The notes below the pieces were generated by a model, which saw nothing but the letters and a program-made list of their open reading frames with translations, had not been told where the DNA came from and searched no databases. The translations under genes and the position numbers were made by a program. From Macrostomum lignano (Eukaryota), in the NCBI GenBank assembly GCA_002269645.1, contig NIVC01000164.1:62001-126000 (forward strand): DNA of 64,000 bases, read 5' to 3'. This document shows positions 6,122-41,848 of the stretch, one piece after another (the first letter of the stretch is position 1; every line of letters starts with the position of its first letter).

Positions 6122-6941
6122 CTTCGGATGACTTCATAAGCGTTAATTTGAACATTAATAAAGTGACATGTTGTACTCCTATTCGTTCGTAATTAGATAT
6201 AGATTTCTTCTATTTGATATAATTTGGAGTCAGAGGATCAGCAAGAAATGAAACTTATTGCCGCTATTTTGACACTAAGACCATACGCGAATAGACTGCT
6301 GGATGCACGCAAAGCTATATAGCCAATTCAACTTTTCAGCAGATATGTACGCTCGTATATTCCGCATTATAGTTTAGTTTTTCTGCTCCTTTTAGCTTGT
6401 CGTTTTCTTATTACCCTTAGTAGCAACATACAAGTATTTTCCCTATCGATTTGACTGCTTAACTTTTATCCTGAACTTCTACGAGCGTAGCTATAGCTTC
6501 TCCTATATCATTAAAACAATATGTATAACGCAGGTCGGACATGTACTTTTGTTTAATAGCATTAAAGTGACGAGTTATAGTGCCACACCATAATGGAATA
6601 ATCCAAAATTTACTCTGGCAGTAGTTTAGAACGTTGCTATTCCAGTTCCAGCACCTTTTGTAACTTAAATGTAATTAAAAATCTAAGAGTATTTTGCATC
6701 GCGTTGCTCTTAATTATTTAATTACATTGGCTATTCACAGTATTACTAATTAGAGAGAATTTAGCCTAGTAAAAAACCCTAAAATTATTTAAAGTCCCTG
6801 AATTCTCCAGAACATGATCCTAGAAGGTTTTGCATGCAAGAAAAATTTCATGTCATTATTTATTGATCTAAAAAACAACACAGCATCAAAAACCTGAATT
6901 TCAATTTCAGCGACTACTGAATTCGTCAAGTGCAGCTGAGA

Positions 6942-14190: not shown

Positions 14191-17100
14191 TCAACCGGCA
14201 GTCGGACCCTCAATCAAGCCTTTATCGCGCAGATTCAAAATCGAATCGGCAATAACGCGCGCGTTGCTGCGCTGATAACCGCCGCTGGTTACCATGACAA
14301 CTGGGATGCCGCGTGTTCGACAGGCTCGGAACACTAGCTCGTCGCGTCTGATGATGCCCTGCGATTGTTGAGAAAAGGCAAAAATTCGCCAGTAGGAACA
14401 GTAAGACATCAGTCTGCAACCATTAAGACAATGCGTTCAAGCAGTCTGTCACTCTGCAGACAAACTAGCAATCAGCCTGTCACTCTATAGACACTAGCAA
14501 TCGACCTGTCGTTCTATAGACACTAGCAATCATCCTGTCACTCTATAGACACTAGCAATCAGCCTGTCACTCTATAGACACTAGCAATCAGCCTGTCACT
14601 CTATAGACACTAGCAATCAACCTGTCGTTCTATAGACACTAGCAATCATCCTGTCACTATAGACACTAAGAATCTGCCTGTCACTCTATAGACACTAAAA
14701 ATTAGCCTGTCACTCTATATGGACACTAAGAATCCGCCTGTCACTCTATATAGACACTAAAAATCAGCATGCCTAATGCTTTATCTACCCCCCGCGGCTC
14801 ACGTTCGGAGTGATTCGCATCAGTCCCAGAGGATCGCCGTCCATAATGTCGGTACCGGCATTGTACAGCACCAGTTGCGGCTGGAAGGAACCATTCAGAG
14901 ACTCCTCTAGAGCTTTCGACACCTCGTCCAGGTAGGCGTTGTCACCAACTCCGGCAGTGAGATCGACACTGCAGCTGATCGCGGCTGAGATTGAGTAGGG
15001 AGCAACAACCGCGAAGATTAGGAACTGCTCTGATTATGGACAAAATTCTAATTTAATATTGTATGTATGCATATATTATGTCAATAGAAGGGGTCGTAGC
15101 CTAGTGGTTACAGCGTCGGACTCACGATTCACGAATTGAAGGTCGGGGGTTCGATTCTCGATCCCACTGGAACAATTTGTGTCATTGAGCAAGACACTCA
15201 ACTCTGCAGTGCTTCAGTTCACCCAGCTGTAAAATGGGTGCCAGCATTAGCTGGGGTAACTGAGAGTGTGTTGGGACTTCCCAGTCCTTGGACTGAACAG
15301 CCGTACTCAGCCTTCAGATGCGCCGCGCAATAGCTGCGGCTGAGCTGTCGGCTGCACATCAATTATTATGTTATGCATGGGTCCTAGATAATGTCATGTT
15401 ATACCAGTCCTAAATTGTGAGCCTGCCATGTATGGGTTACACATTTAGTTGTCATCTGTGTCACCTATGGGCCACAGAAGTTTATATCAGATAGTTATAT
15501 ATAGACGCACTATCTTATCTGTCACGGAAACCTATCACATTGATCAAATAGAGTAACTCACGCTTGGCCGCATTGTCCCCCGGATAAATTTGCACATTGT
15601 AGGCGTCCAATATGAAGACAGTTTTATCGCCTAGAAAGTCCCTCTCGTGCCCGTTGCCCTGGTGAGCGTCGAGGTCAACAATCATGGCCCGTTGAATTTG
15701 GCTTTCCGGACCGGCGTAGCCGCGCTGCAGGAATTTCACAGCCATGGTGATATCGGCGTAGGCGCAAAATCCGCCGCCTCTGTAGCCGCAGCAGTGATGA
15801 AATCCGCCGCCAATGTTGATGGCCCAGCCGCGATCTAGGGCGAGCTTGGCGGCCTGTTTAATTGATTGAAGATAACTGCCGATATGTATCGAAAGTAATA
15901 TAAGTCAACTGCCGATATGTATCGAAAGTAATATAAGTCAACTGCCGATATGTTTTATGTATCGAAAGCAGTATAAGTCAACTGCCGATATGTATCGAAA
16001 GTAATATACGTCAACTGCCGATATTTATCGAAATTGAATTTGCTTTTGATTGGCTTACTAATGATTAGTAATTAATCGAGTCACTAGATCAAATTACCTA
16101 CCGACATGTACCTTAAGGTAGATGTTTATTGACCCAGGAATAGGCATCAAGAAGCTCAAATCAATTGTTGATATACATGTGTCAAACTGCTTTGGTCTAT
16201 TTAACCGTTAGTTCGTTAGTTTAAATAGTTTATTTAAATTAAAGTCACTGGTAAGGAATACTAGCTAGTCAAATGGGTCTTAGTTTGTCACAAGACAGTT
16301 TCTAAGAATTCGTGTTTGAAAATGATTTCGCTTTTTTAACTGAAGCGCGATTTTTTATCACAAAATATACTCATAAATCAACTGCATAAGCTGCAACTTC
16401 CTACTCAAGCAGGAGATAATCCTTCTGTCTGTGACCAAAAATTACCCAATAACGAAAGCCTACGGAAGAAAAGAAAATCTTTTTTGAAACAAAAACAAGA
16501 TAAGTAGGGGGGCTTGTCGAGGCCAAAGCCTGAGAGAAAGTAAACTCACACTGAGCGAAGGGCTCCAAAACTTTTGACTTGACACAATAAAAAACCACAG
16601 AATGACGCGCCACTTCAGCAATGTTGGAATCTTTTGGCAGAGAACTGTACTGCTAGCGCTGGTATTCATCTGCACTGTGGTAAGTGAACTCCATCTTTGC
16701 TGTGTTTTTTCAAGGGGTGGGTAATAATATCCAAGGCTGGGATGCCAGTTTCATAAGACAACGTCTTTACTCGAAGATCAAAAGTTTGAGTACAAGCACA
16801 TTAGCTAAGTGCAATAGTTTCGATGTCGAAGCTAACAACTGTATTTAACAGCCCCTATCTTCGGTTTCAGTTAATAATCTACCAAATTGACCCGAGCTAT
16901 GACTTGAACGACAGCAAAGTGGAATTTTACGAAGACTTCGGCGATAAAGCGTCGAAGAAAGAGGTGCTAATTAACAGTGATAGTGAAAACAAAGAGAATA
17001 GCCTGGATCTGCCAGTGGAAGCTGAGAAAGTACCGGAACCAACACCTGTGTATAACAAGCCAGAAAGCACAGCTCAGCAACCTGAAAGCCTAATACAACA

Positions 17101-20100
17101 GGAACAAATAACTAATCAGAATTCAGCTAATGAGGAGATCCCTGTGTCAGTCAGCAAAGACAGCCTTAGTGATGTCAGACCTGATTCTATCATAGCCTCT
17201 GCTATAGAAGGCATTAAAGTTGCTGCTTCACCACCGCCTCAACAAGAAAATTCAGCTGAAACATCCGTGACAATATCTGAAACATCAGAAGAGCCAAGGG
17301 TATCTCTACCGTCCGTTCAAGAGCACTCAATAACAAGCATACCTAAAATAATTCACCAAATCGCACCAAGTGAGATTCTTCCAATAGTCTATCAATCATT
17401 GATAGAGAGCTGCCTAACCCAGAATGCTGGCTGGCAATATTACATGTGGCGCGACCAAGACAGAGACGCTTTTCTTGAAATTCGATATCCTCATCACGCC
17501 GATTGGTTTAGCAAACTGTCCAGCAGACAGCAACAGGATCAACTATTTCGCTTCTTTGTGCTGCAAGTTTATGGAGGAATCTACCTAGACACGGATATGG
17601 AATGTCTTAAACCAATGGAATCGCTGCTAACGAATATCAGCCTGTTTGTAGGAGCGGAACGACCTGAACTATCAAAAATTGTTCGAAATGTTGATCAATC
17701 AGCTGAAATAACAGCAGTGGCCGGCGCGCCAGGTCACAAAGTGTTCAGTAATCTTATTGAGCAGTTAAGTAGTCTGCCAACCGAACCAGTTGATGTTAGC
17801 TCACTGCTAACTACTGCATTTGATGCCTATAGCAAATCAGTATCTAGTGATGACCCCAAAGTGAATTGTACACTGCGAGACTATCACTATTTTGGACCGG
17901 CGCTTAATTGGTCATTTCCTTGGAACGACTTTTGCAAGGAGCTGCTTCGCGGTGAGTTTTATCAGTGGTTAGGAAGGGATGCATGAAATTTTGTCTAGTC
18001 ATTTTGTACGTAGTCAAATTGCGGCAGTCAGTGGTCGTAGACCCCGTTAAGAACCATTCATAGCTCGTACAACAGCGCATCAGATTAAATATAGCCATTT
18101 CCATCGCATGCATTACCCAATGCGACCTCAATCCAGTGACAACTTTATAGCCACTGTTCACCCAACGGAGACTACCAATAGCGGAATAACATCATGCTAT
18201 TCGAATATTAAGCCTCTATCCATCCACCCACCCGTGTACTCCATCTAAACTCAATCGCTTGACAAAATCCACCAAACAATTAGATTTGAATATTCTGAAC
18301 CCTGGAGAACTAAAAACCCTTGATCGATCAATTAAAGAAATCATTAGCCACCAACTGACGATACATATTGTGAAAAATCAGCTTTTTACTAAATGATAAG
18401 CTAATATAACAAACACAGACTGCTTGCTTAACACCATCGAAAGTTGCTAAATACAAATAACTTAAGGAAAGTGTGAGTGTCTTCCATAAGACTAACACAG
18501 AAAGGCGCAGTTCTTTTTCAAATAAGAGTTAAATAACACCAGTGCACTCAGTACGACAACCCCGCGCTTATATCTGCATCCGAGCATAGTTATTACACGG
18601 TCGATAATTTTCTGCGGCAAGAGAAAGTATATTTAATTGCGTAATATTTACGCAAAAGCCTACTTATAGTAGAGTAGTATAAGAAAACCCAATAAAATGT
18701 GATTCTGTTTGATTTTTTTAACTTTGAATTCCGGAAATAAAAACTGAGTGCAGAATATTTCACTGACTTGTGCGACAGAATCCGGGGTTCTAATTTATTA
18801 GACTAGCCCTAAAGCACAGATCAAAAAGACAATCATACAGTGTAGGACAAGTCAAGTAAATTGTACGAAGGTCATTGGATCATTTCTTTTACAGTCATGC
18901 TTTGAGTTGGCCAAAATCTTCAAGCTAACAGCTATGAGAAATGAGAAAAAGAGTTTTTATACTTGATTGCACAAACGTACACCAAGTGTGCCTGCGTACA
19001 CATTCGTGTGCTTGTTAACCAAATAGGTTAAAAATTAAAAAATACTCACTGTTGTAGAATCCCACCTACACTATCTTAACAAAACTGTAAATAATTTAAT
19101 TCAATTTCGTTTCAGACAATCTGCCATCGGATGCAACTCCGTCTGAACAACAGGGGTTCGAAAAGAAACGACAAGGCTGCATCGAATTGCGCCAGAAAAA
19201 TTGGACACTCTTAGAGTTAAGCGAGGACACCTTGGCGGTGTACAGGTATTCGAATTTAAACTTGGCAAATAGTAATGAGAACTTGTTCAATCTTACTCAA
19301 CAATATCCAGATCGGGTGACTTTTTACAGAACAGTTGGAGTGATTTGAAGCAGTAAGGCTATGTTATAATAACATACATGCGCAACCTTGGGAATCACTC
19401 GGCCGTTTCTATTGGCAACACACACACATGTAAGTCGCTATTGGCTGAGAGCAGTCACATGACTACTATTCCGTCCAATAGCCACTTACATGTGTGTGTT
19501 GCCAATAGAAACGCCCGGGTGAATTCCTAGGTTGCGCCCAAGCATGTTATAATAGCCAGTGTCACCCATACATATTCTTATAATTGCTAATACAAATCTG
19601 GTGACGGGACTATACGCTTGGATTAATATTTAGCATCTCATATACTGAAGTTACTCGTAAATTTTTTTTGTTTAAAATTGCGCAACAAATAGGTAATGAC
19701 AATTACCTATATATTATTTAATAAGATTTTATAATAAGAAAGGTTATAAAGTATTGTAAAAATAGACCTCTCTTTTGTCGCGTACTTTTATTGGTGACAG
19801 AATGAACATAATCATAATTATGAATATGCACTCAATTACTATCTACTTAACTCTACAAATACAATGAATGCACGAAATATTTTAATTGCTACAGCGACTT
19901 ATTAATTTCAAACCGATGGATACTTGCTTATTGTTAATCTTCATAAAATCACTAATGAAATACAGGCCTATGGGCAATCACTCGGATCCCAAGGCTTAAA
20001 GGGAATTGTTTGAATCTCAAGTCTCAGGGCCCAGATTCTTAAGCTCAGGTGGAATTCCATAGATTTCAGGACTCAAGGGAAATTGCTCAGATCACAAGGC

Positions 20101-22038
20101 TCAAGTCAAATTGTTGAGGTGCCAATGCTCGTGTTAATGCCATGTGTCAACCCTGCTTAAATAATATAAAATCCTTATGGTAACTACTTTTTGCAACTAC
20201 ATTTTCTTTGATAGAGTATAGTAAAAACATTATGCTAAATCATATCAGAGCTACTATAAGTAAATAAGTGGCATATTGTAAATAAAATTTGAAATAACTC
20301 ACCAGCACTGTGCCGCCAACATGAAATCGGAACGGTTTTAGTACTTTGCGTTGCACTATAAAATTTGGCAGCATAGCAACTAGGCCCACTTCCGTAACTC
20401 TGGCCACATTAGCGCTCCACTGTTTGAATGGATAGAAGGTCAATAAAATACTGTGGTTCAGGCTAAAACCGTTCATTTACAATACACAAAGTAAGGAAAG
20501 AAGAAAGGGGAAAAGGGGAGGGAAAAAAGAGACGGGACAGGGGAGGGGAAAGAAGAGACGGGAGAGGGGAGGGAAAGAGAGACGGGAGAGGGGAGGGGAA
20601 AGAGAGACGGGAGAGGGGAGGGGAAAGAAGAGACGGGAGAGGGGAGGGGAAAGAGAGACGGGAGAGGGGAGGGGAAAGAAGAGACGAGAGAGGGGAGGGG
20701 AAAGAAGAGACGGGAGAGGGGAGGGGAAAGAGAGACGGGAGAGGGGAGGGGAAAGAGAGACGGGAGAGGGGAGGGGAAAGAAGAGACGGGAGAGGGGAGG
20801 GGAAAGAGAGACGGGAGAGGGGAGGGGAAAGAGAGACGGGAGAGGGGAGGGGAAAGAGAGACGGGAGAGGGGAGGGGAAAGAGAGACGGGAGAGGGGAGG
20901 GGAAAGAAGAGACGGGAGAGGGGAGGGGAAAGAGAGACGGGAGAGGGGAGGGGAAAGAAGAGACGGGAGAGGGAAGAAAAAGAGAGACGGGAGAGGGGAG
21001 GGGAAAGAAGAGACGGGAGAGGGGAGAAAAAGAGAGACGGGAGAGGGGAGGGGAAAGAAGAGACGCGAGAGGGGAGGGGAAAGAGAGACGGGAGAGGGGA
21101 GGGGAAAGAGACGGGAGAGGGGAGGGGAAAGAAGAGACGGGAGAGGGGAGGGGAAAGAAGAGACGGGAGAGGGGAGGGGAAAAAAGAGACGGGAGAGGGG
21201 AGAGGAAAATAAAGACGGGAGAGGGGAGGGGAAAGAAGAGACGGGAGAGGGGAGGGGAAAGAAGAGACGGGAGAGGGGAGGGGAAAGAAGAGACGGGAGA
21301 GGGGAGAGGAAAATAAAGACGGGAGAGGGGAGGGGAAAGAAGAGACGGGAGAGGGGAGGGGAAAGAAGAGACGGGAGAGGGGAGAGGAAAATAAAGACGG
21401 GAGAGGGGAGAGGAAAATAAAGACGGGAGAGGGGAGGGGAAAGAAGAGACGGGAGAGGGGAGGGGAAAGAAGAGACGGGAGAGGGGAGAGGAAAATAAAG
21501 ACGGGAGAGGGGAGGGGAAAGAGGAGACGGGAGGGGAGGGGAAATAAAGACGGGAGAGGGGAGGGAAAAGAGGAGACGGGAGAGGGGAAGAGAAAGAAGA
21601 GACGGAACAGGGGAGGGGAATGGAGCCGAAGAGGGAGACAGGTGAGGGGAAACAGGGGAAGAGCACCAGAGAATGTGGAAAAGAGGAAGTGAGAAAAGTT
21701 CGCACATTCAGGAAATTAAAAACCCAATCGAACCGCACTTTAAGTGAGTTCAAATAGTCAGCCGTGTGCACTTTCAACAAATCCGCCTCTTGCGCTTCAA
21801 GTGGCTGCACAAGCTGATGCTGCTGCAGCAGTCCAGCCTCAATCAGGAAGCCAACAATTTTGCCCCATTTGCCCGAATCGAATGGATGAAGCTTTTCTAG
21901 GCCAGCAAAACTGATATTATAAGATGGATGATAGACAATTGGCCAGCTACTTTCAGGCACAGAAATGTACAGCGGACTGAGATAGCTGGTAGACTCTTTA
22001 GCTGGCCCAGCACCAGCTTCTGAAGCATTGCTAGCCAT
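14191..22038 (-). CDS. HDAC11: Histone deacetylase 11; exons 22038-21739, 20419-20303, 15853-15562, 14984-14803, 14358-14191 (352 aa)
   Basis: All introns are GT-AG and phase-compatible. Motifs WPIVY..YNI.F.GLEKLHPFD.GKW, GWAINIGGGFHHC, DLDAHQGNGHERDF, YNAGTDI..GDPLG and TSGGYQ are present. Confidence 0.95.
14445..14765. repeat. About 29-bp minisatellite filling HDAC11 intron 4
   Basis: Unit CTAGCAATCAGCCTGTCACTCTATAGACA, about 11 copies. Confidence 0.9.
15088..15360 (+). mobile_element. SINE family A, full-length copy in HDAC11 intron 3
   Basis: Head, core and tail are collinear with the copy at 46360-46625. Confidence 0.8.
15875..16035. repeat. 33-bp tandem repeat next to the HDAC11 exon 3 acceptor
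   Basis: Unit AACTGCCGATATGTATCGAAAGTAATATAAGTC, about 4-5 copies. Confidence 0.85.
16602..19348 (+). CDS. Type II membrane glycosyltransferase, family GT32 (DXD sugar-binding); exons 16602-16679, 16871-17951, 19116-19348 (about 463 aa), nested in HDAC11 intron 2
   Basis: Exon 1 encodes a short tail plus hydrophobic anchor, followed by an S/E/P-rich stem and motifs IPKIIHQ, WQYYMW.D and FVLQVYGGIYLDTDMECLKP. Donor GTAAGT at 16680 pairs with the acceptor at 16870 (phase 0); donor GTGAGT at 17952 pairs with the acceptor at 19115 (phase 1). The last exon is less certain. Confidence 0.8.
19357..19557. mobile_element. About 200-bp palindromic MITE-like element
   Basis: GGCTAT..TTATAA at the left end and TTATAATAGCC at the right end; internal arms GTTTCTATTGGCAACACACACACATGTAAGT and ACTTACATGTGTGTGTTGCCAATAGAAAC. 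Confidence 0.7.
20490..21660. repeat. GA-rich minisatellite (about 23-26 bp) filling HDAC11 intron 1
   Basis: Unit GAGACGGGAGAGGGGAGGGGAAAGA(A); source of the spurious P/S/L-rich ORFs. Confidence 0.95.
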
Positions 22039-28200: not shown

Positions 28201-28927
28201 GTGTCGCCTGTCTAGACTGTTAGAGGTCAATCCGTCTCAAACCCAGACAGTCTGACCTTCAAAGATGCGTAAACAATCCATAATTAGAATCCTATGAGAA
28301 GTACATTGAGTATTTTACATAGTTAATAGTAATGGCATAAATTAGTATAGAACTTAGCCTAGATGAGAGAATGGAGAGAAATTCCTAAGCTAGCCTACTG
28401 ACAGTAGGGGAAAAGCGCATCGAAGCAAAATGTGCGGTTCTAAGATTGAAAAAAGGTGCGTCCTCATCAGAACATTGATGTAACGGCCACTCATGCCACT
28501 ACGTATGTTTATAATAGTTCCTAGTAAAATTGTGAGCGCGTGACTGCACTGCACAAACTATTCATATATCGCTACCTGTAAATTTCAACAAAAAACTGAC
28601 CGGTTGCATGAAAAACATGTGACTAGGTCTCACTGGAACGGTATCTATGCGATTCGTGTCGGTTTTACAGAAGTCATGTACTAACAGCGCGGACGATAAG
28701 GGGATTTCTGTCACATGCAGACAGCTCTCTGACACGCCCCTCGATGAGAATACAGTAGCTATAAATCAAAATCAATCTGTACATGGTGTGGTCTCAAAGA
28801 TCTAACTGATTCGGCATATAACAGGCTTCAGTTTACGTGAGTCAATTGGCTATGACATTGATTGGTCAAACTAAGGATTTTTAGATACTGTTAATTGAAA
28901 TTTTAAATCAAATATGTAGTGCTGAAT

Positions 28928-29846
28928 TAGTTCAATCACTCTACCGATCTATCAGACATAGTTCTCTTTTAATCACTCCACCGATCCAGCAGGCATAGCT
29001 TTAGTCCAATCACTCTACCGATTCATCAGATATAGCTTTAGTCCAATCACTCTACCGATTCATCAGGCATAGCTTTAGTCCAATCACTCTACCGATTCAT
29101 CAGATATAGCTTTAGTCCAATCACTCTACCGATTCATCAAGCAAAGCTTTAGTCCAATCACTCTACCGATTCATCAGGCATAGCTTTAGTCCAATCACTC
29201 TACCGATCCATCAGGCATAGCTTTAGTCCAATCACTCTACCGATTCATCAGGCATAGCTTTAGTCCAATCACTCTACCGATCCAGAAGTTATAGCTTTAG
29301 TCCAATCACTCTACCGATCCAGAAGTTATAGCTTTAGTCCAATCACTCTACCGATCCAGAAGTTATAGCTTTAGTCCAATCACTCTACCGATTCATCAGG
29401 CATAGCTTTAGTCCAATCACTCTACCGATCCAGTAGGCATAGCTTTAGTCCAATCACTCTACCGATCCAGCAGGCATAGCTTTAGTCCAATCACTCTACC
29501 GATCCAGCAGGCATAGCTTTAGTCCAATCACTCTACCGATCCAGTAGGCATAGCTTTAGTCCAATCACTCTACCGATTCATCAGGCATAGCTTTAGTCCA
29601 ATCACTCTACCGACTCATCAGATATAGCTTTAGTCCAATCACTCTACCGATTCATCAGGCATAGCTTTAGTCCAATCACTCTACCGATTCATCAGGCATA
29701 GCTTTAGTCCAATCACTCTACCGATTCATCAGGCATAGCTTTAGTCCAATCACTCTACCGATCCAGTAGGCATAGCTTTAGTCCAATCACTCTACCGATC
29801 CAGCAGGCATAGCTTTAGTCCAATCAATCCACTGATTCATCAAGCA
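28928..29846 (+). repeat. 37-bp minisatellite (about 25 copies) directly upstream of the GH45 gene
   Basis: Unit AGCTTTAGTCCAATCACTCTACCGATTCATCAGGCAT; period confirmed at 29041 and 29078. Confidence 0.95.
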
Positions 29847-29869: not shown

Positions 29870-29876
29870 TATAAAG
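29870..29876 (+). promoter_or_regulatory. Candidate TATA box of the GH45 gene
   Basis: TATAAAG lies 81 nt upstream of the ATG and 24 nt after the end of the 37-bp array. Confidence 0.45.
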
Positions 29877-29950: not shown

Positions 29951-30919
29951 ATGGCGCTAAGACACAGATGCCTACTAGTGGCTGCAGTACTGGTCCTGTG
30001 CGCAAGCTCCGTTTGGGCCAACATCAACTGGAATGGCAACAACTGGGCGCACGGCTGCGACTTTCGTAACAACGACTTGTCGAACGTGCGAATCCCTTCA
30101 GAGCAGTGCGGCGGTAGGTGCGCCAACACTCAGGGCTGCACCCATTTCACCTGGACTCAACACAATGGTGGCACCTGCTGGATGAAGCGAGGTAGCGTGT
30201 TAAAGAGCGATGCCTTCCCAACTGGTGACATGACCATGGTGTGCGGCGTTATTGAAGACAACGGTGGCGGCGGTGGCGGCGGAGGCAACAAGGTGCCAGG
30301 ATTCACCACCCGCTACTGGGACTGCTGCAAGCCCAGCTGTTCCTGGCCAGGCAAAGTGCCCGGCCATAACAAATACGTGCGCGCCTGCTATCGCGACGGC
30401 TACGGAGTGACCAGCGATCCCAACGGTGCCAGCGGCTGCAACGGCGGACCCGTGTTCGCCTGCAACAACAACAAGCCGTGGGCGGTGAGCGACCAGCTGG
30501 CCTACGGCTTCGCCGCCGCCACCATCCCCGGTCTGGACGAGAGCGGTCGCTGCTGCGCCTGTTACAAGCTGGACTTCACCAACGGCCCTGTGCAGGGAAA
30601 ATCCATGGTGGTGCAGGTCACCAACAGCGGAGGCGACGTGCACCCGAACCAGTTCGACTTGCAAATCCCAGGCGGCGGTGTCGGCATTTTCAACGGCTGC
30701 AGCGCGCAGTGGAACGCGGGGCCAGACGGCTGGGGCCAGCGCTACGGCGGAGTGTCGAGACGGAGCGAGTGCGGCTCTCTGCCGGCGCAAATTCGCGACG
30801 GCTGCTACTGGCGATTCGACTGGTTCAGGGGGGCCGACAACCCCGCCATGGTGTACTTGAGGGTCCGCTGCCCGGACGCTCTCGTCGCTATCAGCGGCTG
30901 CAGGCGAGATGACGACTGA
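29951..30919 (+). CDS. Secreted endo-beta-1,4-glucanase: signal peptide, PAN/Apple domain, Gly linker, GH45 (subfamily A-type) catalytic domain
   Basis: Intronless, 322 aa. Contains TTRYWDCCKPSCSW (catalytic base Asp), VVQVTNSGGD, QFDLQIPGGGVG (catalytic acid Asp), GWGQRYGG and GCYWRFDWF. The N-terminal domain has 6 Cys (GCDF..CGGRC..GCTHFTW..GTCWMK..VCG). Confidence 0.93.
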   Translation: MALRHRCLLVAAVLVLCASSVWANINWNGNNWAHGCDFRNNDLSNVRIPSEQCGGRCANTQGCTHFTWTQHNGGTCWMKRGSVLKSDAFPTGDMTMVCGVIEDNGGGGGGGGNKVPGFTTRYWDCCKPSCSWPGKVPGHNKYVRACYRDGYGVTSDPNGASGCNGGPVFACNNNKPWAVSDQLAYGFAAATIPGLDESGRCCACYKLDFTNGPVQGKSMVVQVTNSGGDVHPNQFDLQIPGGGVGIFNGCSAQWNAGPDGWGQRYGGVSRRSECGSLPAQIRDGCYWRFDWFRGADNPAMVYLRVRCPDALVAISGCRRDDD

Positions 30920-31004: not shown

Positions 31005-31395
31005 TAGGTAGAGAGGGTAGAGAGAGGGGAGATGAGAGAGGAGGGTGGAGAGCAGGGGAGAGAGGGGAGACAGGGGAGATGAGAGAGGAGGGTGGAGAGC
31101 AGGGGAGAGAGGGGAGACAGGGGAGATGAGAGAGGAGGGTGGAGAGCAGGGGAGAGAGGGGAGACAGGGGAGATGAGAGAGGAGGGTGGAGAGCAGGGGA
31201 GAGAGCGGAGATGAGAGAGGAGGGTGGAGAGCAGGGGAGAGAGGGGAGAGAGGGGAGATGAGAGAGGAGGGTGGAGAGAAGGGGAGAGAGGGGAGATGAG
31301 AGAGGAGGGTGGAGAGAAGGGGAGAGAGGGGAGATGAGAGAGGAGGGTGGAGAGCAGGGGAGAGAGGGGAGATGAGAGAGGAGAGCTGAGAAGAG
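31005..31395. repeat. GA-rich minisatellite downstream of GH45
   Basis: Unit approximately GAGATGAGAGAGGAGGGTGGAGAGCAGGGGAGAGAGGG. Confidence 0.9.
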
Positions 31396-33018: not shown

Positions 33019-33336
33019 ATGGCCGGCCGTATCAGCTCGTTGAAGGTTCTACTGGTGTTCGCGGGTCTCCTTTGCGCCGTGTCAACTCAAGTAGAGGCTC
33101 GACGCATCCGCTGGAACGGCAACTGGGCGTTCGGTTGCGACTTCTACAACCGCGATCTGAAGAATGAGCGGATGCCCGGCGAGCAGTGCGGTGGCGCCTG
33201 CGCCCGAACCCACCGCTGCACCCACTTCGCCTGGACCCGCTACAACGGCGGCACCTGCTGGATGAAGTTCGGCAGCGTGACTAAGAGTGACGCCTTCTCA
33301 ACCGGAGACAACACGATGGTGTGCGGCGTTGTCTAA
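33019..33336 (+). CDS. Secreted stand-alone PAN/Apple-domain mini-protein (105 aa), paralogue of the GH45 N-terminal module
   Basis: Signal peptide MAGRISSLKVLLVFAGLLCAVSTQVEA, then a 6-Cys domain that is 56/76 identical (hand alignment) to the GH45 module. The stop follows immediately after VCGVV. Confidence 0.85.
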   Translation: MAGRISSLKVLLVFAGLLCAVSTQVEARRIRWNGNWAFGCDFYNRDLKNERMPGEQCGGACARTHRCTHFAWTRYNGGTCWMKFGSVTKSDAFSTGDNTMVCGVV

Positions 33337-34376: not shown

Positions 34377-37300
34377 TCAAGCCTTAGCAGCAGCGCCAGA
34401 CGACGCTGGCGGCCTCAGCAGCAGCTCGGCGGTCAGCCGACGAACTTCAACAGATTCGCCAGCCGCGGCAGACGGCAGCACAATATTGCGAAATTCGTAG
34501 CTCAATTCTAGACGGACGCCTTCCCTAGCGGCCAGCTGTCTGGCGCAGCGCAGTCGAGCGAGAAGGCCCAGCCTGCCGGGGCCGCGGAAGGCCACCTCAT
34601 CGGGCCTGTCCGGCTCCGAGCTCGGCGACTGGGCGCCGGCAGCGGCTAGGGGATCGTCGAGGTCTAAGGCGGCGTCGCCGCAGGGTCCGAGGCTGAACTC
34701 GCGGTCTGGCAGGGCTAGCCGGCTGTCCAGGCAGCGCAGACGGACTCCGGTGGGCTTGGAGGCCGGGTTGGTGAGCAGCAGGGTCAGCTGGCAGCTGAGC
34801 GGAGGGGGGGGTTGGCCGAGGATCAGCAAGTGTTAGGGAGAGTTGCACACGGTAAAATCCCCATAGAGGCTTATCTACTCGTAAATCCCAGTGCCCGAAT
34901 CAACCCAAGCAAAACTAACTTCTTCGTCTAATTTTTTCCCAAACTGAAATTCCTATTTGACACATTAAACCCAATATGAAATCCTCATCCAGCACTGCAT
35001 TGATCCTCAAACTGAAATCCCTAACCCACACTATACTATCTCATAAACTGAAATCTCCATTTTACACTATATTTATCCCACAAACTGAAATCCCCATTCC
35101 ACATTATATTTATCCCACAAACTGAAATCCCAAACTCACACAATACATATCCCAAAAAATCCCCATCCCACACTATACATATCCCAAAAAATCCCCATCC
35201 CACACTATACATATCCCAAAAAATCCCCATTCCACACTATACTTATCCCAAAAAATCCCCATCCCACATATTGATCCCCAAATAAAAATTTCCTCCGGCC
35301 CCAATTTCGATGACCTGCGCAACACACTCACCAGTCGTCGCCCTCTCCGCCCTCTCCATCTCCCACGCTGTACAGGCGCATCTCGGGCACATTGTAAAGG
35401 GCGCACAGGTTAATTTTAAACTTAGGCGCGGCCGGATTCAGCTCTGGCTTGCTCAAATTGTGATCGCACTGGCGACAGCGAAGCGACCGTTTGCACAGCA
35501 CCGGCTTGCTGATGGGAGCGAGCTGGCTGCTGCGCTCCGGCTGGATCTCCGGGTCGGCGAGGCGCTGCAGCAGGCTGCTGCGGGTATGCAGCCCCGGCGC
35601 CAGCGGCGACTGCTCGGGCACCGGCGGCAGCCAGTAGGCTTCGTCCAGATCGTCTGGGGGGTCCTCGGTGGCTTGAGCTTCGGGTATGTCCACAGTTTGA
35701 GGCCTGTGGTTAAGTGGTTAATGAAGTGGCTGTTCGTTCAGCTAGGCTTTTAGGTTCGCTTTTTACAAGCTCGAAACTTTTACAAGCTCGAAAATTCACA
35801 ATCTCGAACCTTCACAATCTCGAAGCTTCACAATCTCGAAGCTTCACAAGCTCGAAACTTTACAATCTCGAAACTTCACAATCTCGAAACTTCACTAGCT
35901 CGAAACTTTACAATCTCGAAACTTCACAATCTCGAAGCTTCACAAGCTCGAAACTTCTACAATCTCGAAGATTCACAAGCTCGAAACTTCACAAGCTCGA
36001 AGTTTCACAAGCTCGAAACTTCACAATCTCGAAGCTTCACAAGCTCGAAACTTCACAATCTCGAAGCTTCACAATCTCGAAGATTCACAAGCTCGAAACT
36101 TCACAATCTCGAAGCTTCACAAGCTCGAAGCTTCACGAGCTCAAAACTTCACAGGCTCGAAACTTCACAATCTCGAAGCTTCAAAGCTCGAAGCTTCACA
36201 ATCTCGAAGTTTCACAATCTCGAAGCTTCACAAGCTCGAAACTTCACAAGCTCGAAGTTTCACAATCTCGAAGCTTCACAATCTGGAAGATTCACAAGCT
36301 CGAAACTTCACAATCTCGAAGCTTCACAAGCTCGAAGCTTCACGAGCTCGAAACTTCACAGGCTCGAAACTTCACAATCTCGAAGCTTCAAAGCTCGAAG
36401 CTTCACAATCTCGAAGTTTCACAATCTCGAAGCTTCACAAGCTCGAAGCTTCACAAGCTCGAAACTTCACAAGCTCGAAGTTTCACAATCTCGAAGCTTC
36501 ACAATCTCGAAGCTTCACAAGCTCGAAGCTTCACAATCTCGAAGCTTCACAATCTCGAAGCTTCACAAGCTCAAAATTTTACAAGCTCGAAACTTCACAA
36601 GCTCGAACTTTTTGCAAGCTCGAAACTTTTAACGATGCAAAATTCCGAGTTTGTCAAGTTTCGAGTATACAAAATATCGAGCTTGTGAAAATGTGAAAGA
36701 TTCTGTTTTTTGACGATGTGAAATCTCAATACGCTGAAATGAATGTTTGCGTTCGAATTTGACTGTCTGCAGCACGTTTAAGATTGCAATCGCAATTCGC
36801 ACATCAACTCTGATTGCAGCTGCTTAGATTGAAAGTAAAAAACTCCTTTTCTACTGTTAAAGAGAAAAGTACGAGTAATGAAAATCTAATTCAGTAAAAA
36901 CTAAATACATAAAATTCAAGCATGCATAAAAAACTTCCTCAATTATCTCATGCACTACTTATTACTTGAATTGAAAGTAGTAAAAAAACAATTAATAAAA
37001 AATAGTTCTTATAAATTATAATAAATCATAAACAGTTTTAACCTGTTATTAGCTTCGTCATCGAATAGCGGTACAAGCTTGAATCTGAAGTTTGATTTTG
37101 CTTAAATATTTGTCTAGTACGGGGCTGTGCCAAACAAAAACTGCCAAATAAGTAGTGTATGGTTAGCAGATCAACTTTTAAAGCCGGATCTTTACAATAG
37201 CAAGACGACACAATGCAAGTTCTGCGGATACACAAGGGGCACCAGTGACCCCTCAAACATACACAATGGGGCAGCACTGCAGCAGTGACCCCCCCCCAAA

Positions 37301-40300
37301 CACACAATGGGGCAGCAGTGACACCCCCAATACACACAATGGGGCAGCAGTGACACCCCCAATACACACAATGGGGCACCACTGACCCCTCAAACACACA
37401 CAATGGGACAGCAGTGACCCCCCCCAAACACACACAAAGGGACAGCAGTGACCCCTCAAACATATACAATGGGACAGCAGTGACCCCTCAAACATATACA
37501 ATGGGACAGCAGTGACCCCTCAAACATACACAATGGGACAGCAGTGACCCCTCAAACATACACAATGGGACAGCAGTGACCCCTCAAACATACACAATGG
37601 GGCAGCACTGCAGCAGTGACCCCCCCCCCAAAACACACAATGGGGCAGCAGTGACACCCCCAACACACAATGGGGCACCAGTGACCCCTCAAACGTACAC
37701 AATGGGACAGCAGTGGTGAATACACGAAGGAATAAAATGGGATTAGTACCAAAGCATATAACAGGTTACTAGTGCAACTATTAGCTAGGCATCAGGTGCA
37801 GGCCAGAAACTCACGTGAAATGGCTGGGATTGGCCAGACTCTTCTTTCGCAAAGCCACAGAGGCCAGGCCGTATCGATCGGTCAGACCCGGGGAGAAAAA
37901 CGATTTCTTTCTAACTGCAATCTTCTTGCGCTCCTTCTCGGCCTTCTCTTTCAGAGCCAGCTGGCGAAACGCCTCGGTCAGGGTGGTCAATCGCTTGGAA
38001 TTGTCCTGCCTGAGCTCGGCGCCCTGGGCCAGGTTGCGCCACGGGACAGAGGGCGCCCGCTGGTCCGGTATGCCGCCGTCTCGTGTGGTCCAACTGATTG
38101 GCGTTATTAAAATTCAGATTCAGACTTTGTGATGATGGGTCGAAGCCGTCTGGCATCTCTGAGGTCTTTGTTGCTTGGCAGTAGCAACTCTATATAGTAG
38201 AGTATTTGTGCGACGGGTACCCACCCAATCCTAGTTGATATGGGTCTTTGTAAAGAGTACCTTTGCTCTAGTGTCTTTGTGCGACGGGTACCCACCTAGT
38301 TCATACGAGTCTTTGTGACGGGTACCCACCCAGTTCATACGAGTCTTTGTGACGGGTACCCACCCAGTTCATACGAGTCTTTGTGACGGGTACCCACCCA
38401 GTTCATACGAGTCTTTGTGACAGGTACCCACCCAGTTCATACGAGTCTTTGTGACGGGTACCCAACCAGTTCATACGAGTCTTTGTGACGGGTACCCACC
38501 CAGTTCATACGAGTCTTTGTGACGGGTACCCACCCAGTTCATACGAGTCTTTGTGACGGGTACCCACCCAGTTAGAGTGTGACATGCAGCCACCATGTCC
38601 CTAAAAGTCTTTGTGATAAATCTAAAATTCTCATGATGGGATATTTGGGACTTAGTTGACACATAATAAGGCCAATGAAGTAAATTAACATAAGACTCTG
38701 GGTGTATTGATATAGAATCTGATAAAGTACTTACCGACAGAATGCGCACAGCAGGTAATAGACTTTCTGAGCGACCTGTTTTGTTGGATCGTCGGGGCTT
38801 GGCAGAGTGGCAGAGGTGGCCCTAGTAGACAGGGTGTGGCCGCAGCTGGGACAGTCATAGCAGGCACTGCAGCGGTTCTTTTTTACCTTGGCCTCGCCAG
38901 ATGACATATAGTCTAGGCAGTTAGGGCAGTATTGGCAGTCCACCTGTTGAGCATATGTTGGAGGGACAAGAAGTGTAAGAAATAGTAAGCTAGCCTGGCA
39001 GCAAAATGTAATTCATAGTCATAAAGATGAATTAGAGACAGATTTTGTATTAGAGACAGGCAGCTATATACACACTCAATCCCACCTGTTGTCTTCATGA
39101 TCTCTGTATATTAAGCTGTATACCAAGGGGTATGCAAGGCCCCTCTATATAACAATTATGCCAACAGTTAATGCCAGATCACTCTATATGCTAGAATTAT
39201 TCAACATTTATATCATCTGATTAAGTACAGTATTTCAAATCTTAATTTATAGGGACTAGAATATCTTTTCAATTTTCATTTATGATACACATTTAAATTA
39301 ATTTAGAAATCTTTAATTTTGGCCTTTGGACCACTTGGTTAATAAATATAAAAATATCTTTACATAAGCAACAAGCCTAAGCTTAGTTTTTTTAGAATAC
39401 AATGTCAATGGTTCAATTACATATCATTCTCAAATAGAAAATTGTATTGCTTTATTAAATAGTAGATATCAAAAGTGGTTCTTAGAAGTCTAGCATAAGT
39501 AGCTTCGATTTTCCATTCCTATGGGCTAATCAGTATCCATGTTTTAGCATTGTAAAGGAGGATGGTTTTTATGATAGCCTAGAAAAGCTGCCCACTGCAA
39601 GACAGTCCACCCTAGTGTGGATGTGCCCCAAGTGCTATGCCATGTCATCCATGATACTTGGTACAAGACTATTAAGATAAATAAACTCTTTGCATAAGGC
39701 AGCAATATTATACAACCTGCCTGTTTATACAATGGTAGTAGATTTAGCTGGGAGGTCTATTGGCACAGTTAGCTCCATTGTCTTTTTGGTATTCATGGGT
39801 AATCCAATTGTAACGGCCATTACTATCAACTAGTCTAGTAGGTGTTAGGATCCTTCAGCTATGTTAGACAATAGCACTAGGTCATCCATGTACACAAAGA
39901 TAGAGTTGGTTCTCAGGGTATTGCTTGCTTATTTTGCAGCAGAGAAAAAATCCTTTGGTCTTAGAGTTATCAAAGAGGCTAGTATATAGTATTTAGTCCT
40001 AGATAAGAAAAAACAAATGGGGCCAAGGTGTCCCCTTGGAGAATGCTAGAGGATATGTCAAAAAACTTAGAAAGGTCATCTAGTATCACAACTACTATCT
40101 AAGATTCTTAATACAGAGCTAACATTGCTATCAGTAGCTGCTCAACTATATGATATATGAGCAAAATGTTTATAATAACCTACCTCAAAACTAATTCAAA
40201 GGCCTTTAAGAAGTCCACAAAGTAAAGATGATAGTGAACTTATAGGATTGCAAAAATAATTGAGGCATAAAACCTAGTGGTTTGTTTGCTTTGGTTTTGC

Positions 40301-41848
40301 TCTGATTGTTTTCCCTATGGAAAAGAAAGAGACTTGAATAATTGCATGTTAAGGTGCTATATAATTTTATTTGTATTGATAGAACACATTCTAGAATCCA
40401 GAAAGTTTAAAAAGTAGTTTCTAGAAAGAGTGCGCAGGAGTTTAAAATACCAAATATAGTAAGTGAGTGTTTATGTAAAAGTTTCTAGAATACAAGTATT
40501 GTACCATACGCTATCTTATACCATGTATATGCATTGTTTAGTTGGAAAACTTTCTAGAATATGAGGATTTAAAGCATGTTATAAAATATCATAAAAAATA
40601 GAAATATGCTACAATACTTATAATATAGTGAATACACTACAAACTATTAGATGCAGGCCTCTGGTGCAACTTAGTTTTGTCTAGATTTGTGACTTAGTTT
40701 CTCCCAATTGCGACTTAGTTTCTCCTGATTGCAACTTAGTTCCTCTTGATTGTGATTTAATTTTCACATTGTATATGACTTTTCTTGCCTTTTACTCTTT
40801 TTTCTAGATTTCTTTCTTTCTCTACTCTTTCTCCTCTCTTTCTTTTCCTTCCTTTCTTTTCCTCTCCTTTCTTTTTTGGCAATTGTTATTTGTCCAATAA
40901 CCGGATAAATAGCCTTTTTACTATTTGTCTAGTTAAATTGCTAACATAAGTATCTATTGGTTTCATGATGAATATTCTAGTTTTTAAGACCTTTTCTTAT
41001 ATACTGATTAATATTTTCTTATATACTAGTAAGCAAAGCAATTTATTCAATTTGGCATAATTTGGCATACACACACTAGTATAACAACATAATAATCAAG
41101 ATATGAGTAAGAAGTATTTGAAGTCTAGGAATGTTTACCCATGATGTAGTTTCTATGAAATAGATATTTTAGCATTATCAATTTAATTAGACAAATAGCA
41201 AAATGCCTATTTGTCTGGTATTAACTGGATGAATAGGAAAGCATGGTCATTAGCCTATCCAGTAACCAGACAAATAACCACATCGCTATTCCTCTGGTCA
41301 CTGGACAAATAACAACTACTTTCTTTTTTCCTCTAATTTTTTGTTTTTTGCATTTTTAATTTTGTGATTTACCTTGGCCAGCAGCCATTTTGCTTGTCCA
41401 ATTTGGACAGGTTAGATGGGTGTTGGGCATGTTTATATTGGTGTAGTTGGTTGTTGTTGCTGTTGATTAATAATTTTATATAGGCCTAATAAACAAATGG
41501 AAGTTATTATGACTATTCAAATACAGATCAGCAAAAGCATACAAACGACGATTTGCATAGCCTATGCTATATGATATGGCAATAGTCAATACAACAATAC
41601 TAAATTAAATATTATAGTCAATAAAATAGTCAATAGTCAATACAGTCAATGTAATGTTGCAATATTATGCAGAATTTTTAGTAAAAAATTCTATACTTAG
41701 AGTAACTGAAAATGCATACCTCTGGAAGTACACAATCTTGACATCGAAGTTCAAAACAGTGTTTGCATAGATAAAGGCGGCATAAAGGCTTGCTAACTTT
41801 GCACGAGCAAATGTAATGCACTACGTCTAGATTTAAATATGTAGCCAT
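34377..41848 (-). CDS. DCTN4: Dynactin subunit 4 (p62); exons 41848-41720, 38943-38735, 38093-37815, 35703-35332, 34794-34377 (468 aa)
   Basis: Motifs [67 protein letters not shown] and LLLTNP. All junctions are GT-AG and phase-compatible. Confidence 0.95.
34985..35285. repeat. Minisatellite (about 33-35 bp) in DCTN4 intron 4
   Basis: Unit approximately ATCCCAAAAAATCCCCATCCCACACTATACAT. Confidence 0.8.
35760..36720. repeat. 14-bp tandem array with an inverted tail, in DCTN4 intron 3
   Basis: Unit TCGAAGCTTCACAA / TCGAAACTTCACAA, about 60 copies. An inverted unit (TCGAGCTTGTGAAA) follows near 36677. Confidence 0.9.
37245..37715. repeat. 32-bp minisatellite in DCTN4 intron 3
   Basis: Unit CATACACAATGGGACAGCAGTGACCCCTCAAA. 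Confidence 0.9.
38205..38575. repeat. 34-bp minisatellite in DCTN4 intron 2
   Basis: Unit GTTCATACGAGTCTTTGTGACGGGTACCCACCCA; period confirmed at 38301 and 38335. Confidence 0.92.

What the first reader, a model, noticed from the sequence alone, without database searches (positions are those of the whole stretch)
29951..30919. Intronless fungal-type GH45 cellulase with an N-terminal PAN/Apple module embedded in an animal chromosome
Both catalytic Asp residues are intact, and the gene sits between bona fide animal genes (HDAC11, DCTN4), which argues against contamination. Established: subfamily-A GH45s in beetles and Bursaphelenchus nematodes were acquired horizontally from fungi, where the usual partner is CBM1. 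Here a 6-Cys PAN/Apple module takes that role. Inference: an HGT-derived enzyme for digesting algal or plant walls, with a little-studied binding module, possibly unreported in this lineage.
Basis: partly seen in the sequence, partly recalled or inferred. Interest (0 to 1): 0.75.

Follow-up and report, generated by a model that had tools for sequence, protein, structure and literature searches.

The report
Flatworm cellulase gene with PAN module
The flatworm Macrostomum lignano carries an intact, secreted cellulase gene of foreign type with a lectin-like PAN module, but the same fused gene already exists in rotifers, tardigrades and springtails, so it is a new host for a known kind of gene.

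Summary
Window 29951-30919 (+) is an intronless 322-aa ORF: signal peptide, 6-Cys PAN/Apple module, Gly8 linker and a GH45 domain (Pfam E 3.8e-73). All key catalytic residues and all 14 core cysteines are intact.

The window is Macrostomum lignano contig NIVC01000164.1. The gene lies between a histone-deacetylase gene and DCTN4. Two further contigs carry the same arrangement, with intact ORFs and pN/pS about 0.25, so contamination and chimeric assembly are excluded.

PAN-GH45 is not a local invention replacing CBM1. The same architecture occurs in bdelloid rotifers, tardigrades and Folsomia. In NJ trees the flatworm gene falls inside the rotifer-type clade (294/300 bootstraps), not next to fungi. 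The route into the flatworm is unresolved: secondary transfer, a shared unknown donor, or ancient inheritance with losses.

The PAN fold matches galactose-binding apple lectins. The same PAN subtype is fused elsewhere to GH5, GH6, GH7, GH16, GH20 and expansins, which supports a glycan-targeting role.

No paper found reports GH45 in flatworms or a PAN-GH45 fusion. Verdict: new member of a known kind, moderate interest.

The parts
29951..30919 (+). Complete intronless CDS (322 aa + stop) of the PAN-GH45 endoglucanase gene (NCBI family BOX15_Mlig002476)
29951..30019 (+). Predicted signal peptide, aa 1-23 (MALRHRCLLVAAVLVLCASSVWA)
   Evidence: Read directly from the sequence (hydrophobic core, small residues before the cut). 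No signal-peptide predictor was run.
30020..30259 (+). PAN/Apple module, aa 24-103, with six invariant Cys
30263..30286 (+). Gly8 linker, aa 105-112
   Evidence: translation. Folsomia has a similar poly-Gly linker.
30299..30916 (+). GH45 catalytic domain, aa 117-322. The D124 codon is 30320-30322 (catalytic base) and the D236 codon is 30656-30658 (catalytic acid).
29870..29875 (+). TATA-like box (TATAAA) 81 nt upstream of the ATG, in the short non-repetitive stretch between a satellite and the CDS
   Evidence: This is a sequence motif only; function is not shown.
33019..33336 (+). Neighbouring 105-aa gene encoding a signal peptide plus a single PAN module (66-70% identical to the PAN of the GH45 gene), with the stop directly after the module
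   Evidence: It is present in all three M. lignano loci.
28927..29846 (.). 37-bp satellite (about 25 copies) immediately upstream of the gene, also present upstream of the two other copies
31010..31383 (.). Purine-rich satellite immediately downstream of the gene. Similar purine-rich repeats fill the HDAC intron at 20495-21620.
19933..22038 (-). 5' part of the upstream histone-deacetylase gene (exon 1 about 21736-22038); a bona fide animal neighbour
34377..40919 (-). Downstream multi-exon DCTN4 (dynactin p62) gene. The end coordinate is only as far as the fetched locus showed.

Best explanation
This is a functional gene of the flatworm Macrostomum lignano. It encodes a secreted modular endo-beta-1,4-glucanase: a signal peptide, a lectin-like PAN/Apple module, a flexible Gly8 linker and a GH45 catalytic domain.

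Proposed mechanism (inferred): the protein is secreted, most likely into the gut lumen. The PAN module holds it on a glycan surface, either food cell-wall polysaccharide or a glycoprotein layer. The GH45 domain then cleaves beta-1,4-glucan chains by the inverting mechanism, with D124 as base and D236 as acid.

Origin: the GH45 core is of the fungal/microbial type and is ultimately foreign to animals. The flatworm did not get it directly from a fungus and did not assemble the fusion itself. It belongs to a pre-existing PAN-GH45 family shared with bdelloid rotifers, tardigrades and springtails, and within that family it belongs to the rotifer-type branch. It probably reached the flatworm lineage by a secondary transfer from a rotifer-like or still unsampled eukaryotic carrier. 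It was then triplicated with the host's genome duplication.
For: What is shown:
- ORF and domains.
- All catalytic and substrate residues and the 7 disulfide pairs' cysteines are conserved relative to Cel45A. Best PDB sequence hits have E 6e-76 to 1e-70.
- The PAN fold is confident and closest to the galactose-binding apple lectins SML-2 and TgMIC4.
- The host is M. lignano.
- Three loci on contigs of 252, 165 and 604 kb all show PAN-GH45, then the PAN-only gene, then DCTN4.
- The three CDS are intact, 98.5-98.9% identical, with pN/pS 0.24-0.29.
- The annotation is RNA-seq-derived, so a transcript exists (inferred).
- The same architecture occurs in Rotaria, Adineta, Didymodactylos, Hypsibius, Paramacrobiotus and Folsomia.
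- In the NJ tree of PAN+GH45, rotifers plus Mlig exclude tardigrades and Folsomia in 298/300 bootstraps. Mlig groups with a subset of named rotifers in 294/300. Named rotifers are monophyletic without Mlig in 6/300.
- On the GH45 domain alone the rotifer+Mlig clade separates from all named microbes in 187/200 bootstraps.
- Identities: Mlig to named bdelloids 64-68%, within the bdelloid-bdelloid range of 63-81%, against 55-60% to tardigrades and Folsomia.
- No intron position is shared between the Hypsibius and Folsomia genes. The Mlig, A. vaga and environmental genes are intronless.
- The same PAN subtype is appended to GH5, GH6, GH7, GH16, GH20+CBM1 and a GH128-like core. It is also appended to expansins lying next to the GH45 gene in A. 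vaga and Folsomia.
- Published precedent: oomycete CBEL combines CBM1 with PAN/Apple, and a Gal/GalNAc lectin activity is attributed to PAN (PMC3532174).
Against: - No enzymatic, binding or expression-site data exist.
- His119 of Cel45A is Gln234 here; the consequence is unknown.
- The laboratory food is a diatom, and by my own knowledge diatom walls are not cellulose-rich, so the natural substrate is uncertain.
- The trees are NJ with a simple distance correction. Internal nodes of the rotifer-type clade are weak (10-45%).
- The sister group of the flatworm gene is an environmental clade of unknown taxon (83%). Its 310-kb contig has 41% GC, unlike the A. vaga locus at 30%.
- At the broadest level the tree splits tardigrades and springtail from rotifers plus flatworm. 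That split is also what vertical inheritance would give.
- Monophyly of all PAN-GH45 animals against microbes is unresolved on the GH45 domain (29/200).
- PAN modules also mediate protein-protein binding, and this subtype also occurs on kinases and proteases.
Confidence: 0.65

Rival explanations
1. Ancient inheritance. A PAN-GH45 gene, itself perhaps acquired once from a microbe, was already present in an early protostome or spiralian ancestor. It has been inherited vertically and lost in most lineages. The flatworm copy's position among rotifer copies would then reflect ancient paralogy.
For: - The same unusual architecture and a highly conserved PAN module occur in four phyla.
- A head-to-head PAN-expansin / PAN-GH45 gene pair is shared by a rotifer and a springtail.
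- The deepest supported split is ecdysozoan copies against rotifer+flatworm copies (298/300), which mirrors the species tree.
- A published precedent exists for an early Panarthropoda-wide HGT of GH43 (PMC9460274).
Against: - The flatworm groups with only a subset of rotifer copies in 294/300 bootstraps.
- Flatworm-bdelloid identity (64-76%) equals the identity among bdelloid copies, although the flatworm-rotifer split is far older.
- No shared introns.
- No other flatworm appears among the 120 best database hits.
- An ostracod sequence (Darwinula) falls in the rotifer-type clade, not with Folsomia.
Confidence: 0.25
2. One reading: a direct fungus-to-flatworm transfer of a GH45, followed by fusion to an endogenous animal PAN module in this lineage.
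For: The GH45 domain is 56-62% identical to fungal GH45s. Fungal donors are the accepted source for beetle and nematode GH45s (PMC6509783).
Against: - The flatworm's GH45 domain and PAN module are both closest to rotifer-type PAN-GH45 proteins (68-76% over the whole length).
- The rotifer+flatworm clade excludes all named fungi in 187/200 bootstraps.
- An independent fusion to the same PAN subtype with the same linker layout would have to occur repeatedly.
Confidence: 0.04
3. Artefact: contamination from food diatoms, rotifers or fungi in the culture, or a chimeric assembly join.
For: The gene's GC (62%) is well above the window mean (43%). Its closest named relatives are rotifers.
Against: - Three separate contigs carry the same gene order next to a multi-exon DCTN4, with homologous flanks 92-99% identical, including host satellites.
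- The neighbouring DCTN4 exon has the same GC3 (0.78) as the GH45 gene.
- M. lignano is a hidden polyploid, which explains the three copies (PMC5704211 abstract).
Confidence: 0.01
4. The gene is real but not digestive. The protein might remodel or attack beta-glucan material for another purpose, such as defence against oomycete or fungal hyphae, biofilm or egg-shell handling. Alternatively the PAN module might tether the enzyme to the worm's own glycoproteins rather than to the substrate.
For: - The nearest structural relatives of the PAN module bind galactose on glycoproteins, not cellulose. CBEL's PAN is credited with Gal/GalNAc binding.
- The culture food is a diatom.
- Stand-alone secreted PAN proteins are common.
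Against: This PAN subtype is repeatedly coupled to cellulose-active partners (GH5, GH6, GH7, GH45, expansin). That fits a role in plant or algal wall breakdown. Characterised animal GH45s are digestive cellulases (PMC6509783).
Confidence: 0.15

Closest known systems
PAN-GH45 proteins of bdelloid rotifers (Rotaria, Adineta, Didymodactylos), deposited as 'Cellulase' or 'unnamed protein product'. Rotifer GH45s are described as HGT-derived (Szydlowski et al. 2015, as cited in PMC6509783).
   Same: Same architecture: signal peptide, PAN, linker, GH45. Identity is 64-71% over the full length. The genes are intronless, and stand-alone PAN genes also exist in these animals.
   Different: The host is a flatworm. 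No PAN-expansin partner gene lies next to it. Codon composition is much more GC-rich (GC3 0.78 against a gene GC of 36% in A. vaga).
PAN-GH45 of tardigrades (Hypsibius exemplaris 'Endoglucanase-5', Paramacrobiotus) and the springtail Folsomia candida; the solved springtail GH45 5h4u
   Same: Same modules and catalytic residues. 5h4u is the best PDB hit (E 5.9e-76).
   Different: Only 55-60% identical and on a separate branch. These genes have lineage-specific introns, and some carry two PAN modules.
Fungal GH45 endoglucanases, e.g. Humicola insolens Cel45A/EGV (2ENG), and Mucoromycota GH45-CBM1 enzymes
   Same: 56-62% identity in the catalytic domain. Identical catalytic dyad, Tyr8/Ala74/Asp114 and cysteine framework.
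   Different: The fungal enzymes carry a C-terminal CBM1 (or no module), not an N-terminal PAN. His119 is replaced by Gln in the flatworm enzyme.
HGT-derived GH45s of Phytophaga beetles and Bursaphelenchus/Aphelenchoides nematodes
   Same: Animal-encoded GH45 with a patchy distribution, interpreted as horizontal acquisition (PMC6509783).
   Different: These have no PAN module. Beetle proteins are only 36-42% identical, and nematode proteins fall in another part of the tree.
Oomycete CBEL (CBM1 + PAN/Apple) and apicomplexan apple-domain lectins (SML-2, TgMIC4)
   Same: A PAN/Apple fold used in carbohydrate recognition, and in CBEL combined with a cellulose-binding function.
   Different: These have no catalytic domain. 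Sequence identity is only 15-22%. Their known ligands are galactose-type sugars, not beta-glucans.

Membership tests
Glycoside hydrolase family 45 | Sequence match to the family model above the curated threshold | tested here: met
   PF02015: 246.4 bits against a cutoff of 27, covering profile positions 2-214 of 214. PDB GH45 hits have E 6e-76 to 7e-70.
Glycoside hydrolase family 45 | Catalytic base and acid aspartates (Asp10, Asp121 of Cel45A) plus Tyr8, Ala74 and Asp114 | tested here: met
   D124, D236, Y122, A189 and D229 align to these positions. The residue list is from PMC6509783.
Glycoside hydrolase family 45 | [quoted passage not shown] | not testable with these tools
   Needs a recombinant enzyme assay.
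   The base Asp is present and identity to Cel45A is 56%. No formal CAZy subfamily assignment or reference subfamily B/C sequences were included in the trees.
PAN/Apple domain | Match to PAN profile models | tested here: met
   PAN_4 scores 27.3 bits (cutoff 27) and PAN_1 21.6 bits (cutoff 21.4), both marginal.
PAN/Apple domain | PAN fold (beta-sheet packed on one helix) | tested here: met
   AF2 pLDDT 93.8. Foldseek matches SML-2, factor XI/prekallikrein apple domains, TgMIC4 and the HGF N domain with probability 1.0 and TMq 0.6-0.69.
PAN/Apple domain | Conserved cysteine framework (apple type: six Cys, three disulfides) | tested here: inconclusive
   Six Cys are invariant in 58 modules. Disulfide connectivity was not examined in the model.
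Carbohydrate-binding module (functional class) | Non-catalytic module appended to carbohydrate-active enzymes | tested here: met
   The same PAN subtype is found with GH45, GH5, GH6, GH7, GH16, GH20+CBM1, Glyco_hydro_cc and expansin.
Carbohydrate-binding module (functional class) | Demonstrated binding to a carbohydrate | not testable with these tools
   Needs binding assays or a glycan array.
Horizontally acquired gene in an animal | Physically integrated in the host genome next to host genes | tested here: met
   Three syntenic loci on large contigs.
Horizontally acquired gene in an animal | Phylogenetic nesting within a non-animal donor group | tested here: inconclusive
   The gene nests in an animal-dominated PAN-GH45 clade. 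The relation of that clade to fungi or bacteria is unresolved. Published trees put rotifer and tardigrade GH45 near Neocallimastigaceae with bootstrap 14.
Horizontally acquired gene in an animal | Absence from close relatives of the host | not tested
   No other flatworm is among the 120 best of 2237 hits, but other Macrostomum and flatworm genomes could not be searched directly.

The most novel reading that the evidence does not exclude
PAN-GH45, together with PAN-expansin and stand-alone PAN genes, forms a cellulose-attack toolkit that moves between microscopic animals. The flatworm would have obtained its copy from a rotifer-like animal rather than from a microbe, making this an animal-to-animal transfer. 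Its PAN subtype would be an unrecognised family of polysaccharide-binding module used with GH5, GH6, GH7, GH16, GH45 and expansins.
Probability: 0.25. Interest if true: 0.8.

Novelty: new member of a known kind. Interest (0 to 1): 0.5.

Why it matters
- Animal-encoded cellulases acquired from microbes are a classic case of horizontal transfer shaping diet. This would add Platyhelminthes to the short list of phyla with GH45.
- It does so in a model flatworm with transgenesis and good genomic resources (PMC5730564), so expression, knock-down and feeding tests are practical.
- The PAN module recurs on many cellulose-active proteins of microfauna, yet I found no description of it as a binding module. 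It is a candidate new carbohydrate-binding module family.
- The rotifer-type affinity of the flatworm gene, and the PAN-expansin/PAN-GH45 gene pair shared by a rotifer and a springtail, raise a testable question: are such genes passed between small animals, or drawn from one unsampled donor?

Tried and rejected
- Base composition as a sign of foreign origin: rejected. The gene's GC3 (0.78) equals that of the adjacent DCTN4 exon, and host ORFs in the window range from 0.38 to 0.78.
- Taxonomic identification of the environmental sister clade (P0004-7, P0125/6): failed. The contigs come from metagenome or SRA assemblies without organism labels, their neighbours are uninformative (Kelch, AATase/Condensation-like, MFS), and no tRNAs were found.
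- GH45 remnant downstream of the PAN-only gene: none found (tblastn E<10).
- An expansin ('X') domain in the window or in the three M. lignano loci: none. No M. lignano protein is among the 114 expansin-family hits.
- Sequence-based identification of the X domain by Pfam and PDB: no hit. It was solved only by structure prediction and fold search.
- Shared intron positions between the tardigrade and springtail genes: none. The nearest pair is 4 codons apart and in different phases.
- A canonical AATAAA within 480 bp downstream of the stop: none.
- LTRs around the gypsy element: none found within 55-64 kb.
- Single origin of all PAN-GH45 genes from the GH45 domain alone: unresolved (29/200 bootstraps).
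- Literature searches for GH45 with flatworm, GH45 with PAN domain, Macrostomum with cellulase or HGT, and PAN as a CBM: nothing relevant.

Full report
**Observation.** The window contains an ATG-to-stop ORF at 29951..30919 on the plus strand, 322 aa, exactly as reported.
- Pfam assigns aa 117-318 to Glyco_hydro_45 (E 3.8e-73, 246 bits against a cutoff of 27).
- Aa 37-89 match PAN_4 and PAN_1 only just above their cutoffs (27.3 vs 27; 21.6 vs 21.4).
- Against solved structures, the catalytic part matches the springtail GH45 5h4u (E 5.9e-76) and the fungal GH45s 5glx, 1l8f, 1oa7 and 2eng (E 1e-70 to 2e-74).
- Aligned to Humicola Cel45A, the protein keeps Tyr8, Asp10, Ala74, Asp114 and Asp121 (Y122, D124, A189, D229, D236) and all 14 cysteines. 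His119 is Gln234. Identity is 56%. The list of important residues is from PMC6509783.
- The N-terminus reads as a signal peptide (aa 1-23). A Gly8 run at aa 105-112 separates the two domains.
- Because the PAN call was marginal, I modelled aa 23-103 with an alignment of 58 homologous modules. The model has pLDDT 93.8.
- Its best structural matches are the Sarcocystis lectin SML-2 (also solved with thiogalactose), factor XI and prekallikrein apple domains, TgMIC4 apple domains, the PAN module of a Colletotrichum copper oxidase and the HGF N domain.
- Six cysteines are invariant across the 58 modules.

**Host and genomic setting.** The exact protein is encoded on NCBI contig NIVC01000164.1 (252 kb) of assembly GCA_002269645.1. 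[quoted passage not shown]
- The called neighbours are a histone-deacetylase gene upstream on the minus strand and dynactin p62 (DCTN4) downstream on the minus strand. Both are multi-exon.
It encodes a signal peptide plus one PAN module, 66-70% identical to the PAN of the GH45 gene, and stops right after the module.
- Two more M. lignano proteins, 98% identical (BOX15_Mlig002476g2 and g3, 'hypothetical protein'), lie on contigs of 165 and 604 kb. Both show the same order: PAN-GH45, PAN-only gene, DCTN4.
- Flanks are 92-99% identical, including the 37-bp satellite directly upstream.
- All three CDS are intact and differ by 6-8 synonymous and 5-7 non-synonymous changes (pN/pS 0.24-0.29; small counts).
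- M. lignano is a hidden polyploid (PMC5704211 abstract), which explains the triplication.
- The annotation was derived from RNA-seq assemblies, so a transcript very probably exists.

These facts exclude contamination and a chimeric join. Base composition is not informative: GC3 is 0.78 for both the GH45 gene and the neighbouring DCTN4 exon.

**Relatives.** The database search returned 2237 proteins.
- The best named hits share the whole architecture: Rotaria species (68-71% identity), Adineta vaga and A. steineri (61-62%), Didymodactylos, the tardigrades Hypsibius exemplaris and Paramacrobiotus (52-59%, some with two PAN modules) and the springtail Folsomia candida (58%).
- Fungal GH45s, mostly Mucoromycota with CBM1, match only the catalytic domain at about 56-62%.
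- The main published GH45 phylogeny lists Collembola, Oribatida, Tardigrada, Rotifera, Nematoda and Phytophaga beetles. It does not mention flatworms or PAN.
- My searches found no paper linking GH45 or cellulase with flatworms or Macrostomum, and none linking GH45 with PAN domains.

**Phylogeny.** No ML software was available, so I used neighbour joining on Kimura-corrected distances with bootstrapping.
- On the GH45 domain (122 sequences, 204 columns), the flatworm copies fall in a clade with all bdelloid sequences, the ostracod Darwinula and many unlabelled sequences (82%). Deep nodes are unresolved.
- In 187/200 bootstraps the flatworm and the named rotifers are separated from all named fungi, bacteria, nematodes and beetles. 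A single clade of all PAN-bearing animals appears in only 29/200.
- On PAN+GH45 together (46 sequences, 292 columns), rotifers plus flatworm exclude tardigrades and Folsomia in 298/300 bootstraps.
- In the same analysis the flatworm groups with only a subset of the named rotifers in 294/300. Named rotifers are monophyletic without it in 6/300. Its sister is an environmental clade (83%).
- Identities agree: flatworm to named bdelloids 64-68% and to the environmental clade 71-76%. That lies within the 63-81% seen among bdelloid copies and above the 55-60% to tardigrades and Folsomia.
- Intron mapping shows two introns in the Hypsibius gene and five in the Folsomia gene, none at a shared position. 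The flatworm, A. vaga and environmental genes have none.

Direct transfer from a fungus into the flatworm is therefore very unlikely. The choice between a secondary transfer (from a rotifer-like animal or a shared unsampled donor) and ancient inheritance with ancient paralogy and many losses is not settled. I favour the former, because the flatworm copy is as close to bdelloid copies as they are to each other.

**The PAN module.** The module alone retrieves many small secreted PAN-only proteins of 100-140 aa, including Rotaria proteins. Tandem arrays of the module also exist.
- A profile search of 1.84 billion representatives found 2533 proteins at E<=1e-3.
- Among the 56 longest of the best 150, the partners include GH45, GH5, GH6 (P0307), GH7 (P0337), GH16 (P0340, P0421), GH20 with a CBM1 (P0387), a Glyco_hydro_cc core (P0351) and a GMC oxidoreductase. 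Tyrosine kinases, astacins, trypsins and TSP1 repeats also occur.
- In A. vaga and Folsomia the gene lying head-to-head with PAN-GH45 encodes PAN plus a 205-aa domain without a Pfam or PDB sequence match.
- That domain is 49% identical between the two animals (E 1.7e-64). Its AF2 model (pLDDT 92) matches two-domain microbial expansins over its full length (EXLX1 9ms5 at E 4e-10; also 7wvr, 4jcw, 3d30).
- The expansin family has the same distribution (bdelloids, Brachionus, tardigrades, Folsomia), with no named microbe and no M. lignano member.
- Oomycete CBEL is a published precedent for PAN/Apple joined to a cellulose-binding module, with Gal/GalNAc lectin activity ascribed to PAN (PMC3532174).

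The ligand is unknown, and protein binding is not excluded.

**Mechanism.**
- Shown: an intact, conserved, probably transcribed gene for a secreted two-module protein with a complete GH45 active site.
- Inferred: it is secreted into the gut, the PAN module concentrates it on a polysaccharide or glycoprotein surface, and the GH45 domain cleaves beta-1,4-glucans by inversion with D124 and D236.
- Open: the natural substrate. The laboratory diet is the diatom Nitzschia curvilineata, whose wall is, to my knowledge, not cellulose-rich.

**Verdict.** This is a real and well-supported gene. The wider points of interest are the candidate binding-module status of this PAN subtype and the cross-phylum PAN-expansin/PAN-GH45 pair.

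Noticed in passing
window 33019-33336 (+): A 105-aa secreted PAN-only gene lies directly downstream of the GH45 gene and is present in all three M. lignano loci. Its module is most similar to the PAN of the neighbouring GH45 gene (70%), which suggests a local partial duplication. Similar stand-alone PAN proteins are common in Rotaria and in metagenomes.
   Followed up: partly
L003 2438-3367 (-) with 6001-6930 (+); L005 4307-5355 (-) with 6001-7305 (+): In Adineta vaga and Folsomia candida a PAN-expansin gene lies head-to-head with PAN-GH45. The expansin part is 49% identical between rotifer and springtail, and its fold matches microbial EXLX1. This is a gene pair shared across phyla. In Folsomia the two PAN modules are 95% identical, which suggests gene conversion.
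   Followed up: partly
proteins P0307, P0337, P0340, P0351, P0387, P0421, P0424 (one search hits): The same PAN subtype is fused to GH6, GH7, GH16, a GH128-like core, GH20 with CBM1, and GH5 in unlabelled database proteins. The organisms are unknown.
   Followed up: partly
window 57004-61250 (+): An apparently intact Ty3/gypsy-type retroelement: a gag-like ORF (DUF7041) and a 1107-aa pol with protease, RT, RNase H and integrase. GC is about 58%. No LTR pair was found within 55-64 kb.
   Followed up: partly
window 4626-8818 (+): Two paralogous gene fragments have weak matches to the MACPF_SNTX (stonustoxin-like perforin) domain (E 9e-4 to 3e-3), followed by long coiled-coil-like ORFs.
   Followed up: no
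window 16823-17986 (+): A single 387-aa ORF with a Gly_transf_sug (DXD glycosyltransferase) domain, E 4e-15. Its low GC3 (0.38) contrasts with neighbouring genes.
   Followed up: no
window 20495-21620, 31010-31383, 1336-1821; also 28927-29846, 35765-36607, 37280-37715: The region is dense in satellites. A purine-rich GGGAGA-type repeat occurs in the HDAC intron and downstream of the GH45 gene, and apparently in the opposite orientation near 1.3-1.8 kb. A 37-bp satellite abuts the GH45 promoter region. 16-bp and 32-bp arrays lie inside DCTN4 introns.
   Followed up: partly
L004 1419-2130 (+): The Hypsibius locus holds a second, weak GH45-like match (41% identity in two pieces) about 4 kb upstream of its PAN-GH45 gene. 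It may be a diverged copy or a pseudogene.
   Followed up: no
protein P0037 (Darwinula stevensoni, 219 aa): An ostracod GH45 without a PAN module is 72% identical to the flatworm catalytic domain and falls in the rotifer-type clade rather than with the other arthropod. This could be a further transfer or rotifer contamination of that assembly.
   Followed up: no
L002 (ENA ERZ26165376 ctg354997, 310 kb): The closest long non-flatworm contig has 41% GC and intronless neighbours (an AATase/Condensation-like gene and an MFS transporter). This is unlike the A. vaga locus (30% GC). Its organism could not be identified, and it could represent the carrier or donor lineage.
   Followed up: partly
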